DNA of 64,000 nucleotides from Vitrella brassicaformis CCMP3155 (taxonomy: Eukaryota; Protista; Chromerida): the NCBI GenBank assembly GCA_001179505.1, contig CDMY01000403.1:1-64000 (forward strand), read 5' to 3'. Below the pieces are notes generated by a model. It saw only the letters and a list, made by a program, of their open reading frames with translations. It did no database searches and had not been told where the DNA came from. Shown here piece by piece: positions 36,441 through 42,435 of the stretch. The position numbers and the translations under genes were made by a program. The first letter of the stretch is position 1; every line of letters starts with the position of its first letter.

Positions 36441-37375
36441 GTTAAGCCTCCAGGACGTCTTGTCCAGAAATAAAGCACAAAACCTCCAGGCCCAAGCAGG
36501 CAGGCAGGCAGGCACACACGAGGGCAAAAATGGCAGCCACGCGGCCGTCCTCCCCCCAACACAAATAAATCTCATCCATCCATCGAAGGACCGGCCGGCC
36601 GGCTGCCATGTCCCTGCCCATCTCCCGCAGACATTGCACAAACCTCACTCACTGACTGTACACACACACACAGACAGGCACACAGACAGGCAGACAGACA
36701 GACAGCGCTCTATCTTTCTCTCTCTCTCTCTCTCTCTCTCTCGGTCGGTGAAAAATCGGCTCTAAACCCTGCCAGCCAGCTTTGGTTGGTATGTACAGAT
36801 AAAACACAGCACAGCCATTCATTCGTTGATTGATTCAGTCATCTGCTGTGTGTGGAAGAATGGCAGGCAAGGCAAAAACTCCCCTCTTCCTTCCTTCCTT
36901 CCTTCCTTCCTCGATCGCTCCTGGCTGTCTGTCTGTGCAGACACAGATACTCACAGCGAGCGTGCGCACGTCAGTCACGTGTGCATCCCATCCATCCATC
37001 CATGCAGGCACGCAGGCAGGCATGCAGCCGTCGCTTCGTTGTGGAGTGGGAGGGTCAAAATCCATCCATCCATCCATCCGTCCATCCACCCACCATGGAT
37101 CAATCACAACCGTCGCTGCCCCTTCCCTCCCTCCCTCCCTCCCTCCCTCTCCTCCCCCGCTCCCCCTGCCAGCCACCACGTGTGCGCGTGGATGGTGTGG
37201 GTGAGTGGGCGTCTGTTACGCTGGGGTAGGTTCGCTCTCCTTGATGGCCTCGGTGAGGGCCCTGTTGATAGATGAAGACACACATGAATGAATGAGCCCA
37301 CATAGCATCTATAGTGGGGCTGGTGGATGTGCATGTGTGTGCTTATTCATCTGGGTGGGTGACGACAGACACCGT

Positions 37376-40300
37376 TTACCTTGGGAGCTTCCAGTTGACG
37401 TTTTCCTCCGCGAAGACGAACTCCTCTGTTTGTGTCACACCGAGCTCCTTCAGCCGATCCACCACTCGCTGCACAACGTCCTCGGGTGTGGAGGCGCCTG
37501 CCGTGAGGGTGATGGTCTTGACCCCATCCAGCCACTCCTCGCGGATGTCGTCTGGACCCTGAATCAACTTGCCCCTACACACACACACACACACAACACG
37601 TGTACCGCATCCAGATGACCTGCGCATGTATGTGCGTGTGTGCGGGGCGTCCGTCCGTCCATACTTGACATTCCTCAGCTCGGCGGTTTCCCTCAGCCGC
37701 TTGGAATTGGACGACATCTGGTCACCCACCACCAGCGCCAGGTCGCTCTGCCATTCGACACACACCGGACACACGCCCTCTTGGATGGATGGATGGATTG
37801 GTGGATGCCTCACCCGCCCCACCTGTTCGACGACCTCCCTCATGGCGCCCTGCCTGTTGGTGGTGGCGAAGCAGATGCTCCCGCTCGGAATGCTCTCGAC
37901 GTGGGGATAACGCAGCTTCAACGCAGCTGTGTCCAATACACACACACACACACACACGGAGGGACGGATCACTTGAGAAGGTGTGTTGCTGTGCTGTGCT
38001 GTGCTGCGGTGTGGTGTGGTGTGGTGTGCTGTGGTGTGCTGTGCCGACCAACGATGTCTTTGCAGTCGTCCATTGACAGAGTGGTCTGCGTGGCGTAGAA
38101 CAGCCTGAAGGCACACAAGACACACAGCAAAGACATGACACTTGTGTGTCTGTGTGTGTGGGTGGGTATGTGTGTGGCTGACTAGACAGACTGACTTGTC
38201 GTTTTCGGTGAAGGGGAGGTTCATGACGTCCTGCACGCTCTCGACGATGGTCGTCTGGTCGGGGGCCTCCCCCTTGGTGCCGATCGTCTCAACTACACCA
38301 CACCACACCACACGCACACTGATGACATTGACGCACACACACCCTATAGTATAGCGTGCGGACTCACTAACCGTGATCGGCGTGGCCAATAAGGATGATG
38401 TGATACCCCTCCTTAGCCTTCCGCTTGGCGTATACGTGGACCTGCACGCGCACACACGCACCAGACACACGTAACGCCTGAACGCATGAGCGCATAACGG
38501 CGGGGCGGGCGGGCGGAGGGTGCGCACCTTAGTGACGAGAGGGCAAGTGGCGTCGACCTCCATGAGGTTCCGCTGCTTGGCGACGTCGCGGACCTCCGGG
38601 GGTATGCCGTGGGCCGAGTAGATGATCTTCTCGCCCTCCGGCACCTCGTTCAGGTCCTCGATGAAGATCACACCCTTGTTCTGTGTTCCCATACATAACA
38701 TACACACAGACAGACAGACAGACAGATGGCCCAGTGAGTGTGTGTGTGTGCGCGCGTTGCATGTAGAAGGTGACCTTGAGTCGGTCACAGACGATTCTGT
38801 TGTGCACGATCTCGTGTTTGACGTAGATGGGCGGGCCCCACAGCTTGAGCGCCTCCTCGACTGTGTCGATGGCACGAACGACGCCCTGATTGAGTGATAA
38901 AAGGACCGACCAACGATATGATGGACACACACCAACGAATGCGTGTGATGTGAGCGCTGGTGCAGGCAGGCAGGCAGGCACGGACCTCGCAGAAGCCTCG
39001 TGGGTTGGTGAGTACCAGCTTGATGCCTGGAAGGAAGGACGAGGCGAGGCGAATCAAGGGGAGGGGAGATGCAGATTGATGGGTTCATGGGAAGGTGTAC
39101 ATGTCATGTGTGTGGGTACGGTATCTTACCTTCTCCCTGCTGCTGCTCCTGCGCCGCTGCTGGCTGCGTGTCGGTCATCATGGTGTTGGCCTTGGAGGTC
39201 ATCTCGCTCTTGGCCGAGCCCACCAGCTGGTTGTACCTCTCCACCTCATCAGCCGACCCATACGCCACCGGACTGCGGTCGTCGGTCGAGCTGATCTGCG
39301 GAAAATGGAGGCACACACACACACACGAGTGTTTCTTCATGTGTGTGATATGAGGGGCGGGGGGCGGGTTTGATTTGCGTGCCTTGACGTCGAGTATTGA
39401 CGCGAGTCCGTTTGACGACTTGCCACCGGCCTTCTCCACGATATAGGCCAGCGGGGCAACCTTGACACACACACACACACACACACAAGGGTTGATGCCT
39501 TCACATATTGACGGATGCATGTATGCAGTGACTGCCTAACTGACCTCGTAGAGCAGCCGCAGCTTGGCGGGCGCTGCGTCGCTCGATGGGTTCACGAAGA
39601 CGCCCTGAATGACGTACATGACGTCCATGTGTGTGTGTGTGTGTGTGGCCATGCGTGTGTGTGGATGGCTGCGTACCTTTCCTTTGACGAGCAGCTGGAA
39701 GACATCAGGCACCATGCCGCCAGTGTACCTGCAGCCATATGGATGGATGTGTCACGAAACACAGGTGTGCGAATGGATCCGCGTACGTGTGGACGTGTGT
39801 GTGCGTCTCAGCCGGCCTAGCCTACCTTAGTTGGTATTTGTTCTTGACCCAGAAGTCCACCAGCTCGTTGTAGCCCTTGTTGTCCTGCGTTGCACGGAGA
39901 TTGCCTGCACACACACACACACATTCACACACAGAGAGAGAGAGAGAGAGAGTGAAGCACGCACGCTCTCGTGTCCACAGACGTACCCGGTGCGAACAGT
40001 TTGCCCTCTCCGATTTCGGTGAAGCGGTTGGTGTGGACCCAGTCGCCGTGGCGCTGGCCCATGTCGTCGACCAGCGTGAACTCATGCGCACCCTCAACGC
40101 CCTCCACGGCGATCGTCATCGACACGCGGGGGCCGTACATGGCCAAACCTGTCATGTCACACACACACATGGGATGGTGATACAGACAGACAGAGATGGG
40201 TGCGGGGGTCAGCAGGAACGTACCAGCTGCGCTGAGCTCCCTGCCCGTGATGCCCGTCAGCCTGCTGCCCGGCCACACGCCGAAGAGCGTCCCCACAGCA

Positions 40301-41367
40301 AAGTTCGTGTCAACTGCACACACAGTGCACGCCACGCCCTTCTGGAGGTGTGTATACATGTATGTGTGTGTGTATATGCGCCGACCGACCGATGGACGAT
40401 CCATCAAGTGGGTCGAATGCGACACTGTATGTGCCGTCGAGATCGTCGCCCTCGGCGATGAGCGGCTTCTCGACGGGCTCCTCCTCGCTTGACGCAGTCG
40501 ACACCACCCCTGCACACACAACACACACGATGGGTGGGTGGGTGTTATACTGTGTGTGTGTGTGTCAGGACATTCCCTCCCTCTGTGTGTGAGTGTGAGT
40601 GTGTGTGAACGTACCCGATTGATCCAGGTTGAAGAAAATCAGATTGTTGGCCAAAATGTCCACAGCCAACTGCACACACACACACACACACACACATACA
40701 CACACAGAGGTGTAATGGATGCGCCTCATGATGGACAGACCTGTTCATCCCCAAAGTTGTTGAAGCACGACGTAGAATCACACGAGGCCGTCCGCACCTG
40801 ACAATCACACACACACCCCCACGAGCGTCCAATCCAATCCAATCCAATCAGCTTGTCTGCCTGCCTGCCCGCGTCCGTACCTTGTATCCGATTTCCTTAC
40901 AGGCGTCGAACATGGCCTTGAGGACCTTCTGCAGCTTGGGCTCCACCCCGCTGTCGGCCAGCCAGTCGTACAGCGTCTCACCCAACTTCATGCTCAGAGA
41001 GGCCGGGTGGGCGGGTGGCACAGACACATCACCTGAACACACACACGCACACACACATCCGCACAGAAACAGAATCACATCCTGATCTCAGATCTGCCGA
41101 AGTGGAGTCCCTGGTTGTTGGCGCGAGTGGCTGACCTTCGTCGCTTGTCATGCGGACTGGACCTCGCAGGCGAAACGCCCCACGAGGCCAGCCGGCAGGG
41201 TGCAGATGGCCTGGCGCTGCTCCTCTCCTCTCACCAAGATGGATAGCACCGCCGCTGGACGAGATCCCTGCCCGCCAATGTGCTGGTGGGCGAAAGGCGC
41301 ACGACGGCACCGCCGTGATGGCCATCATGCAGAGGCACAGCCATGCAGGCGGCACCAGCTGCGCCAT
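37376..41367 (-). CDS. SBP-ispH: Plastid-targeted sedoheptulose-1,7-bisphosphatase / 4-hydroxy-3-methylbut-2-enyl diphosphate reductase (SBPase-IspH/HDR) fusion protein
   Basis: Signal + transit peptide (…AVPSCA|FRPP). SBPase part: [49 protein letters not shown]. Intron 39129-39027 joins GAA G|GC ATC in frame. IspH part: [60 protein letters not shown]. Confidence 0.9.
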
Positions 41368-41441
41368 CAGCTGCGGGAGCGACTTCATTCTCCAGATGCA
41401 CGGCTGTCTCTCTCTGGTGCTCCCTCTTGCCGAGAGCAGGA

Positions 41442-41451
41442 AAGCTCGCAA
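41442..41451 (+). promoter_or_regulatory. Candidate promoter motif AAGCTCGCAA
   Basis: Lies in the 180-bp region between the SBP-ispH ATG and the chromodomain-gene ATG. Confidence 0.45.
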
Positions 41452-41547
41452 CAAGACCTCTCTAAAGGCCGAAGGGAAGGGTGCATAGGCAGGATGAGTG
41501 TTCCTGGTGCCGCTGCAGCCGCTGCGGCGAGCGTGCTGAGCGATGGT

Positions 41548-42435
41548 ATGAGCCCACACGCGTCCGACGCAGATCCCCATGGAGGACAGAACCATAACGG
41601 AGAGGTGAGGTGATGAGAGAGTGCGTGAGTGAGTGAGCACACATGCGTTAACGAACGTTGGCATGGCATGCACCCCACCCCATCCATGTATACCACGCCT
41701 CCATGCGTCCGTCCATCCGCGCAGGCGAAGGATGCGTCAGGCAACGGTGACGGCATAGAGTGCGAGGAGGTGGTTGACGAGCCGATGCCGTCCGCCAGTG
41801 GGGACCCCCACCAGGGACAGCAGCAGAGGGGTGAGCAAGGTCAGTCAGCACGGGGTGACCGCGGTGCCACTGAGCGAGGATGGGGGGGAGGGTGGGTGGT
41901 CACGTCACGTCACGGAATGCATTGCATGCAACACATATGCAGCACCAACTTAACTAATGTCTGTGTGTCCTGACTGACTGTCCTTGGTCTCTTCACATTG
42001 ATTGATTGTTGATTATTGATTTGATTGCATCATGTGCGGCAGTGGGTGCGGGTGGTGGTGAGGTGGAGTACATCGGTTGTGGACCCATATTCACTCGCGC
42101 ACACCACACACACAGAAAGGTAGGGAGGGAGGATCACCACAAATGACAGACAGCAGACGGCACGCTCCATCGTGTGTGTATGCTATGGGTGTGGTCTGTC
42201 CGTGTGTCTGTCTGTCTGTCTGTGCAGTCGTTGCGTCCGGCCGGCTGCGCGCTGCCCAAAGGTCTCTACCCGCTCTCGTCGGTGCTCAAGTCGGTGCCTG
42301 GCGAGGCAGCCGTGGCCGATATCGCTGTGGGCAGGTGGCAGATGGCCGTGCTGCTCGACAACAGTAGGGTGTGTGTCTGGAGGGGGAGGTGAGTGACTGA
42401 GTGAGTCAGGGAGTGAGGGGCGGGAAGTCGTGTTG

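What the first reader, a model, noticed from the sequence alone, without database searches (positions are those of the whole stretch)
37376..41367. Calvin-cycle SBPase fused in frame to the MEP-pathway enzyme IspH/HDR in one plastid-targeted gene
Seen: one signal+transit peptide precedes a complete SBPase that keeps the CxxxxC pair (SCDSTSC, 40782-40765). A ~30-aa Ala/Gln/Thr linker follows. A canonical 103-nt GT-AG intron (39129-39027) then joins GAA G to GC ATC AAG, giving …[19 protein letters not shown]. The IspH half has no start Met or targeting peptide of its own and keeps the three [4Fe-4S] Cys, the catalytic His/Glu and the SNS motif. It begins at the position of the E. coli-type N-terminus, without the cyanobacterial/plant extension. 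Established: plastid SBPase is activated through ferredoxin/thioredoxin at this Cys pair, and IspH takes electrons from ferredoxin to make IPP/DMAPP. Inference: the fusion could tie isoprenoid output to light-driven carbon fixation, stoichiometrically or through redox control. I recall a similar SBP/HDR fusion reported from Chromera but cannot verify it, so novelty needs a literature check.
Basis: partly seen in the sequence, partly recalled or inferred. Interest (0 to 1): 0.85.

Follow-up and report, generated by a model that had tools for sequence, protein, structure and literature searches.

The report
Known SBPase–IspH fusion gene, Vitrella copy
This is the Vitrella brassicaformis copy of a plastid gene that joins a sedoheptulose bisphosphatase to the last enzyme of the MEP isoprenoid pathway; the fusion is real and transcribed as one mRNA, but it was published for Chromera in 2014 and shown to be widespread in apicomplexan relatives in 2019.

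Summary
One minus-strand gene of 22 exons (CDS 41388..37216, 759 codons) encodes a signal peptide, a transit peptide, a complete SBPase, a hinge of about 30 residues and a complete IspH. Assembled RNA contigs from four runs in three studies carry the fully spliced mRNA. That includes the 103-nt GT-AG intron 39129-39027, which joins the two halves.

Two boundaries need correcting:
- The first ATG of the mRNA is 41388, not 41367.
- A last intron (37379-37262) and a 15-codon exon were missed, so the stop is at 37218-37216, not 37376.

The window is Vitrella brassicaformis CCMP3155. From residue 80 on, the product is identical to the public 680-aa protein. That public model starts at an internal Met and so lacks the signal peptide.

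The fusion is already known. Petersen et al. 2014 described SBP3-HDR in Chromera. Janouskovec et al. 2019 showed that it is widespread and that the IspH half is Chlamydiae-like.

The proposed coupling to light-driven carbon fixation is untested, and comparison weakens it. In the non-photosynthetic Digyalum and Cardiosporidium the fusion persists, but its SBPase motifs have decayed while the IspH motifs stay intact.

Another read of this scan (s1-218443) covered the same stretch with the same bounds I reach.

The parts
37216..41388 (-). Coding region of the SBP3-IspH fusion gene. It has 22 exons and 21 introns of 71-122 nt, and encodes a 759-aa precursor of 82.8 kDa.
   Evidence: Exon table. 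The product is identical to public protein P0001 from residue 80. The piece lengths of the fully spliced RNA contig match the model exon by exon. Mass.
41389..41448 (-). 5' UTR, at least this far. It holds no ATG in any frame upstream of 41388 within the transcribed stretch.
   Evidence: RNA contig pieces 41134-41419 (X1) and 41134-41448 (X7). ATG scan.
41293..41388 (-). Predicted signal peptide, residues 1-32 (hydrophobic core [12 protein letters not shown]). Cleavage is expected after SCA, leaving Phe at +1 of the transit peptide.
   Evidence: Kyte-Doolittle scan. The cleavage site and the Phe rule are inference from what is known of complex red plastids. This part is missing from the public model P0001.
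41136..41292 (-). Transit-peptide-like stretch in the rest of exon 1: rich in Arg, Ala, Gly, Pro and Ser, with few acidic residues. It continues about 12 residues into exon 2.
   Evidence: Composition. The alignment shows no homology to SBPases before about residue 98. AF2 pLDDT is below 50 for P0001 residues 1-19.
41033..41135 (-). Intron 1 (103 nt, GT-AG).
   Evidence: RNA contig pieces 40879-41030 and 41134-41419 are adjacent in the contig's own coordinates. This replaces my first guess of a donor at 41234.
39227..41032 (-). Exons 2-12 up to the hinge: the SBPase (SBP3) domain, residues about 98-409, with Pfam FBPase and FBPase_C.
   Evidence: Pfam, (2e-35 and 1.5e-39). PDB 5iz3 E 3e-104 and 7b2o E 4.5e-102. 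Catalytic motifs intact. pLDDT above 90.
40765..40782 (-). CDSTSC (C141...C146), the SBPase-type regulatory Cys pair.
   Evidence: It aligns with the CGATAC of Physcomitrium and the CAGTAC (C115-C120) of Chlamydomonas SBPase (PMC11961124).
39296..39382 (-). Intron 11, a GC-AG intron.
   Evidence: joint 39295->39383, ends CT..GC on the + strand.
39130..39226 (-). Hinge coding region, residues 410-442. It is rich in Ala, Gln, Thr and Met, has no homology to either enzyme, and is predicted disordered.
   Evidence: Alignment. AF2 pLDDT below 50 for P0001 335-359 (residues 414-438 of the full protein) and pTM 0.57.
39027..39129 (-). Intron 12 (103 nt, GT-AG, phase 1). It lies at the hinge/IspH boundary, one codon before the residue that aligns with E. 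coli IspH Met1.
   Evidence: The joint is present in 4 of 4 runs.
37216..39026 (-). Exons 13-22: the IspH/LytB domain, residues 443-759, of the short bacterial (Chlamydiae-like) type.
   Evidence: Pfam LYTB 1.6e-87. PDB 4n7b E 1.9e-95 and E. coli IspH 1.3e-76. All 10 named bacterial hits among the best 120 are Chlamydiota.
38989..38991 (-). Codon of Cys454, equivalent to E. coli C12 ([4Fe-4S] ligand).
38543..38545 (-). Codon of Cys538, equivalent to E. coli C96.
37871..37873 (-). Codon of Cys636, equivalent to E. coli C197.
37262..37379 (-). It is followed by the last exon, 37261-37216, with stop TAA at 37218-37216.
   Evidence: Joint 37260->37379 in 4 of 4 runs. Exon table. C-terminal homology.

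Best explanation
This is the Vitrella brassicaformis orthologue of the published nuclear sbp3-hdr (SBP3-IspH) fusion gene.

Shown:
- One promoter gives one spliced mRNA.
- The mRNA encodes a 759-aa precursor: a signal peptide, a transit peptide, an SBPase of the plant-like class-I FBPase fold with all catalytic motifs and the SBPase-type Cys pair, a hinge of about 30 residues predicted to be disordered, and a short bacterial-type (Chlamydiae-like) IspH with all [4Fe-4S] ligands and substrate-binding residues.

Inferred:
- The bipartite leader carries both enzymes together across the four plastid membranes.
- In the stroma the SBPase half hydrolyses sedoheptulose-1,7-bisphosphate under thiol control, and the IspH half reduces HMBPP to IPP and DMAPP with electrons from ferredoxin.
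- The two halves behave as independently folded domains on a flexible tether, of about 73 kDa when mature.
- The fusion arose once, in the common ancestor of apicomplexans, chrompodellids and squirmids. At that time a chlamydial ispH replaced the cyanobacterial one and landed downstream of sbp3 (Janouskovec 2019).
For: Gene model and identity to the public Vitrella protein.

One RNA contig joins all exons in four runs from three studies, with the same assembler depth over both halves.

Pfam finds FBPase, FBPase_C and LYTB on one chain.

SBP half: E 3e-104 to Physcomitrium SBPase and 4.5e-102 to Chlamydomonas SBPase, with the Cys pair aligned. IspH half: E 1.9e-95 to P. falciparum LytB and 1.3e-76 to E. 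coli IspH, with all key residues kept and the N-terminus aligned to E. coli Met1.

AF2 gives both domains pLDDT above 90, the hinge below 50, and pTM 0.57.

The Chromera orthologue P0268 (AHK23664.1, 730 aa) is collinear and 60% identical.

Literature: PMC3971594 and PMC6733595. All named bacterial best hits are Chlamydiota.
Against: There is no protein-level evidence that the polypeptide stays in one piece after import. No enzyme assay exists for either half.

The RNA evidence is assembled contigs, not single long reads, so a minor IspH-only transcript from an internal start cannot be excluded.

The signal and transit peptides are predicted from sequence only.

Chromera has two other SBPs (SBP1, SBP2) in the Calvin-cycle clade of red-plastid algae, so SBP3 may not be the main Calvin-cycle enzyme.
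Confidence: 0.9

Rival explanations
1. The fusion is only a co-expression and co-import device. After import the disordered hinge is cut, and the two enzymes then work as separate proteins of about 34 and 35 kDa.
For: The hinge is predicted disordered and no fixed contact between the domains is predicted (pLDDT below 50, pTM 0.57). The hinge sequence is not conserved between Vitrella, Chromera and Digyalum. Coccidia and haemosporidia manage with IspH alone.
Against: No processing site is known and no protein data exist. Where SBPase motifs have decayed (Digyalum, Cardiosporidium), the domain is still kept in frame. That is hard to explain if it were simply cut off and useless.
Confidence: 0.2
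2. The SBP3 half is not the working Calvin-cycle SBPase. It serves mainly as a structural or regulatory partner of IspH (dimerisation, solubility or import carrier), or in another sugar-phosphate route. Its intact active site in chromerids is an ancestral state that is not essential to the fusion.
For: Chromera SBP1 and SBP2, not SBP3, lie in the Calvin-cycle clade of red-plastid algae. The fusion persists in non-photosynthetic Digyalum and Cardiosporidium, and in two environmental sequences, with the GDEQLAVD, SEEE, DPLDGSS, RYTGG and KLRLLYE motifs decayed and every IspH motif intact.
Against: In Vitrella and Chromera every catalytic motif and the Cys pair are intact, and the domain is about as close to plant SBPase as plant SBPases are to each other. 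This argues for retained catalysis in the phototrophs. Lineages that lost SBP3 altogether still have a working IspH.
Confidence: 0.3
3. It is an artefact: two neighbouring genes wrongly merged through assembly error, read-through or a mis-called intron.
For: None found. In principle, contigs assembled from short reads can chain neighbouring transcripts.
Against: The junction is a spliced exon-exon joint with GT-AG ends, seen in four runs from three studies. The frame is kept. The IspH half has no Met or leader of its own. The same architecture occurs in cDNAs of Chromera, Digyalum and Cardiosporidium and in environmental sequences.
Confidence: 0.02

Closest known systems
Chromera velia SBP3-HDR fusion protein (KC899090 / AHK23664.1; Petersen et al. 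2014, PMC3971594)
   Same: Same order (leader, SBP3, hinge, chlamydial-type HDR/IspH). It is collinear over the whole length and 60% identical. An intron lies in or at the hinge. Catalytic motifs are intact in both halves.
   Different: Vitrella has 21 introns against the 15 reported for Chromera. Its hinge is about 30 residues against about 40. Its transit peptide is longer. Chromera reads GDNQ where Vitrella reads GDEQ. Intron positions could not be compared, because only Chromera transcript contigs were retrievable.
SBP3-IspH fusions of non-photosynthetic relatives (Digyalum oweni P0005; Cardiosporidium cionae KAF8819348.1 P0122; Janouskovec et al. 2019, PMC6733595)
   Same: Same domain order, with a highly conserved IspH half carrying all key residues.
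   Different: Their SBP halves have lost the metal-binding and catalytic motifs (for example DSLSGYM in place of DPLDGSS and SIDLVHS in place of KLRLLYE), so they are probably pseudoenzymes. Vitrella's half is intact.
Calvin-cycle SBPase of plants and green algae (Physcomitrium 5IZ3, Chlamydomonas 7B2O)
   Same: Class-I FBPase fold, E around 1e-104. The regulatory loop ASCxxxxC is aligned and the active site is intact.
   Different: Here the enzyme carries a C-terminal IspH. It belongs to the SBP3 paralogue rather than to the SBP1/SBP2 clade of red-plastid algae. Its redox behaviour is untested.
Apicomplexan IspH/LytB (P. falciparum 4N7B; Besnoitia, Plasmodium proteins P0127, P0131)
   Same: Same chlamydial-type IspH. 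This is the best solved-structure match (E 1.9e-95).
   Different: Those proteins have low-complexity N-terminal extensions with no detectable SBP remnant (hhalign probability 0.1% or less). Vitrella keeps the ancestral SBP3 domain.
Bacterial IspH fusions (IspH-RPS1, IspH-UbiA 'Rosetta stone' proteins, PMC4746011; also seen here: DXS-IspH P0180, phytoene/squalene synthase-IspH P0167)
   Same: IspH is repeatedly found fused to other enzymes.
   Different: The partners are different. In IspH-RPS1 and IspH-UbiA the IspH part lies at the N-terminal end (for example P0163). None of these fusions involves an FBPase-fold domain.

Membership tests
SBP3-IspH (sbp3-hdr) fusion of apicomplexans, chrompodellids and squirmids | An N-terminal FBPase-fold SBP domain and a C-terminal LytB/IspH domain on one polypeptide. 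| tested here: met
   Pfam PF00316, PF18913 and PF02401 on P0001. Spliced model.
SBP3-IspH (sbp3-hdr) fusion of apicomplexans, chrompodellids and squirmids | Both halves are on a single mRNA, joined by splicing. | tested here: met
   Joint 39025->39129, and one contig through all exons in 4 runs from 3 studies.
SBP3-IspH (sbp3-hdr) fusion of apicomplexans, chrompodellids and squirmids | Orthology to the Chromera prototype over the full length. | tested here: met
   P0268 is the top full-length relative, 60% identical and collinear.
SBP3-IspH (sbp3-hdr) fusion of apicomplexans, chrompodellids and squirmids | The IspH half is of the Chlamydiae-like type, not the cyanobacterial or plant type. | tested here: met
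   All 10 named bacterial hits among the best 120 are Chlamydiota. There is no cyanobacterial or plant N-terminal extension, and the domain starts at E. coli Met1. No tree was built here; the trees are in PMC3971594 and PMC6733595.
SBP3-IspH (sbp3-hdr) fusion of apicomplexans, chrompodellids and squirmids | A bipartite plastid-targeting leader (signal peptide plus transit peptide). | tested here: inconclusive
   The hydrophobic N-terminus, the SCA|F site and the Arg-rich stretch fit, and RNA covers ATG 41388. No dedicated predictor or localisation experiment was available.
IspH/LytB (HMBPP reductase) | Three Cys ligands of the [4Fe-4S] cluster, plus H41, H74, H124, E126, T167, S225-S226-N227 and S269 (E. 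coli numbering). | tested here: met
   PDB alignments. Motif table.
IspH/LytB (HMBPP reductase) | HMBPP reductase activity with ferredoxin as electron donor. | not testable with these tools
   This needs complementation of an E. coli ispH mutant or an in-vitro assay.
Redox-regulated plastid SBPase | Class-I FBPase fold with intact metal-binding and catalytic motifs. | tested here: met
   [28 protein letters not shown] and KLRLLYE are all present. PDB. AF2 pLDDT above 90.
Redox-regulated plastid SBPase | The SBPase-type Cys pair in the ASCxxxxC loop. | tested here: met
   C141 and C146 align with Chlamydomonas C115 and C120.
Redox-regulated plastid SBPase | Thioredoxin-dependent activation, and a role in the Calvin cycle. 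| not testable with these tools
   This needs biochemistry. In Chlamydomonas this Cys pair is not the sole switch. In Chromera, SBP1 and SBP2 occupy the Calvin-cycle clade.

The most novel reading that the evidence does not exclude
The SBP3 moiety does something for IspH that does not need SBPase catalysis, for example dimerising it, keeping the Fe-S enzyme soluble, or carrying it through import. This would explain why non-photosynthetic lineages (Digyalum, Cardiosporidium and two environmental relatives) keep it in frame as a decayed pseudoenzyme. In the phototrophs Vitrella and Chromera the same domain is still an active, thiol-gated SBPase, so IspH there rides on a redox-responsive dimer. 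The decay pattern does not appear in the text I could search of the two papers on the fusion.
Probability: 0.3. Interest if true: 0.45.

Novelty: already known. Interest (0 to 1): 0.2.

Why it matters
The fusion is an established shared derived character. It links the plastids of apicomplexans, chrompodellids and squirmids, and it marks the replacement of the cyanobacterial ispH by a chlamydial one.

This window adds only small things:
- RNA-supported proof that the Vitrella copy is one transcript.
- A corrected 5' end that restores the signal peptide missing from the public model. This may explain why Vitrella IspH is absent from the published list of signal-peptide-bearing plastid proteins.
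- The comparison showing that the SBPase half is intact only in the two phototrophs.

IspH is a drug target in Plasmodium and Toxoplasma. Knowing whether its ancestral partner domain had a structural role could bear on how the apicoplast enzyme is stabilised, but that remains speculative.

Tried and rejected
1. My first model ended exon 1 at a GTGAGA donor at 41234. RNA contigs show exon 1 running unbroken down to 41136, with intron 1 at 41135-41033, so that model was dropped.

2. I asked whether the long N-terminal extensions of coccidian (Besnoitia P0127) and Plasmodium (P0131) IspH are decayed SBP3 remnants. Comparing a profile of six SBP3 halves with them by hhalign gave probability 0.1% or less. 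There is no detectable remnant, in line with the published statement that those lineages lack SBP3.

3. I tried to fetch the Chromera genomic locus to compare intron positions. Only intron-less transcript contigs came back, so it remains untested whether the hinge intron is shared.

4. A literature search for functional work on the fusion (terms SBP3 and IspH) found only the 2019 eLife paper. I found no biochemical study.

5. I did not build phylogenies of either half. The published trees and the ranking of hits were judged enough for a known case.

Full report
**What is in the sequence**

Reading 37000-41800 on the minus strand shows a run of short exons. They are separated by introns of 71-122 nt that are rich in (TG)n. 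Joining them at GT-AG sites gives an open frame.

After one correction from RNA data, the model has 22 exons, with CDS 41388..37216 and 759 codons. From residue 80 to the end the translation is identical to P0001. P0001 is a 680-aa 'unnamed protein product' of Vitrella brassicaformis CCMP3155, and it already carries the Pfam domains FBPase, FBPase_C and LYTB. The window is therefore Vitrella nuclear DNA, and a fused model is already public.

**Check of the observation**

- CDSTSC lies at 40782-40765.
- The 103-nt intron 39129-39027 is GT-AG and phase 1, and it joins ...QGEG to [15 protein letters not shown].
- The hinge (residues 410-442) matches neither enzyme.

Two boundaries are off:
In fact intron 21 (37379-37262) is removed, and a final 15-codon exon ends at 37216. 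Its peptide (ALTEAIKESEPTPA) aligns with the C-termini of the homologues.

Intron 11 is GC-AG.

**RNA evidence**

Assembled contigs of four public runs from three studies were laid on 36900-41700.

- All four runs carry the joint 39025->39129. It skips 103 nt, and its ends are CT..AC on the + strand, which is GT..AG on the gene's strand.
- Single contigs (2378 nt in X1, 3112 nt in X7) run from the last exon to the 5' UTR.
- The gaps between their laid pieces equal the summed lengths of my intervening exons, so these contigs are the fully spliced mRNA of the model.
- Assembler depth is the same over both halves, so nothing points to an abundant IspH-only transcript.
- Exon 1 is unbroken from 41136 to at least 41448. 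This rejected my first guess of a donor at 41234. It also shows that the public model's start (MTSDEG, an internal Met at about 41151) is too far downstream.

One caveat applies. These are contigs, not single molecules, so a rare internal start cannot be excluded.

**The leader**

Residues 1-32 have a hydrophobic core and an SCA|F site. The next 65 residues or so are rich in Arg, Ala, Gly, Pro and Ser and carry few acidic residues. This is the pattern expected for a bipartite leader of a complex red plastid, but that is inference and no predictor was run.

The published table of plastid proteins with predicted signal peptides lists IspH of Chromera (Cvel_2579) and has no Vitrella entry. That fits the truncated public model.

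**The SBPase half**

The best solved relatives are:
- Physcomitrium SBPase 5IZ3 (E 3e-104);
- Chlamydomonas SBPase 7B2O (E 4.5e-102);
- Toxoplasma SBPase 4IR8, which is much further away (E 6e-64).

The motifs that hold the metals and substrate are all present: [28 protein letters not shown] and KLRLLYE. C141 and C146 align with the C115-C120 disulfide of the Chlamydomonas ASCAGTAC loop.

The Chlamydomonas paper also reports that C115S and C120S mutants still need DTT and Mg for activity. The pair is therefore conserved but is not the only redox control (PMC11961124).

**The IspH half**

The best solved relative is P. falciparum LytB 4N7B (E 1.9e-95), followed by E. coli IspH (1.3e-76). The equivalents of E. 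coli C12, C96, C197, H41, H74, H124, E126, T167, S225-S226-N227 and S269 are all kept.

I443 aligns with E. coli Met1, so there is no cyanobacterial or plant N-terminal extension. Among the best 120 database hits, every named bacterial one is from Chlamydiota. This agrees with the published chlamydial origin.

**Fold**

AlphaFold2 was run on a 53-row alignment. It gives both domains pLDDT above 90. The hinge falls below 50 (P0001 residues 335-359, which are 414-438 of the full protein), and pTM is 0.57. This describes two well-defined domains with no confident mutual orientation, joined by a flexible tether. The loop around the Cys pair also has lower confidence.

**What is known**

Petersen et al. 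2014 (PMC3971594) described 'the most conspicuous transcript' of Chromera velia. It encodes a biprotein with an N-terminal SBP3 and a C-terminal HDR, linked by a hinge of about 40 residues. It has a bipartite leader and 15 introns, one of them in the hinge. They also showed that the HDR is a chlamydial xenologue.

In my searches the Chromera protein (P0268, AHK23664.1, 730 aa) is the closest full-length relative, at 60% identity. Further fusions come from Digyalum oweni (P0005), Cardiosporidium cionae (P0122), a JGI metagenome (P0002) and a Logan assembly (P0049).

**The functional idea**

Nothing here tests that directly, and two comparisons weaken it.

- In Chromera, SBP1 and SBP2, not SBP3, lie in the Calvin-cycle clade of red-plastid (CASH) algae.
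- In the fusions of non-photosynthetic Digyalum and Cardiosporidium, and in the two environmental sequences, the SBPase motifs have decayed. Examples are DSLSGYM, APLD-SS or gaps in place of DPLDGSS, and SIDLVHS or AMKLLHV in place of KLRLLYE. Every IspH motif is kept.

The domain is thus retained where photosynthesis, and probably SBPase catalysis, are gone. That hints at a role other than catalysis, or at slow decay. In Vitrella and Chromera the domain looks fully competent.

I found no SBP remnant in the N-terminal extensions of Besnoitia or Plasmodium IspH.

**Verdict**

It is the Vitrella orthologue of a fusion published in 2014 and 2019, so novelty is 'already known' and interest is low.

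The modest additions are the RNA-supported 5' extension with a signal peptide, the GC-AG intron, and the contrast between intact SBP3 in phototrophs and decayed SBP3 in non-photosynthetic lineages.

An earlier read of the same stretch in this scan (s1-218443) gave the bounds 37216-41388, which my RNA-based model confirms.

Noticed in passing
window 41136-41388: The public Vitrella protein model (P0001, 680 aa) starts at an internal Met (MTSDEG, about 41151) and lacks the 79 N-terminal residues that include the signal peptide. RNA contigs cover the upstream ATG at 41388.
   Followed up: yes
window 41460-41605: Separate RNA contigs of about 3.4 kb (X7, X8) end at 41460-41480, only about 12-30 nt from the 5' end of the SBP3-IspH mRNA contig (41448). 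This is a very closely spaced neighbouring transcript, possibly head-to-head with a shared promoter. Its strand and identity were not determined.
   Followed up: no
window 36900-37060, 37866-38187 (intron 18), 38832-38992 (intron 13): Assembler depth is 10 to 100 times higher than in the exons, and many contigs join or break here. The stretches are simple repeats, (CTGC)n, CACAGCACACCACA-type and (GGAT)n/(GGGA)n. They recur in many transcripts of this genome and produce spurious 'joints' such as 37009->38962.
   Followed up: partly
window 39296-39382: A GC-AG intron (donor GCACGC), confirmed by RNA contigs in all four runs. The other 20 introns are GT-AG.
   Followed up: yes
proteins P0005, P0122, P0002, P0049 (not in the window): In SBP3-IspH fusions of the non-photosynthetic Digyalum and Cardiosporidium, and in two environmental sequences, the SBPase catalytic motifs have decayed while all IspH motifs are kept. 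The SBP3 domain there is probably a pseudoenzyme.
   Followed up: partly
proteins P0180, P0167, P0164, P0126 (not in the window): The representative search turned up other IspH or SBP architectures: DXS-IspH (931 aa), phytoene/squalene synthase-IspH (623 aa), a PNP_UDP_1-like domain fused to IspH (617 aa), and a tandem double SBPase/FBPase (661 aa). Their organisms are unknown.
   Followed up: no
If real, it would be a second case of a non-catalytic FBPase-fold domain fused to a plastid protein in Vitrella. I did not check it.
   Followed up: no
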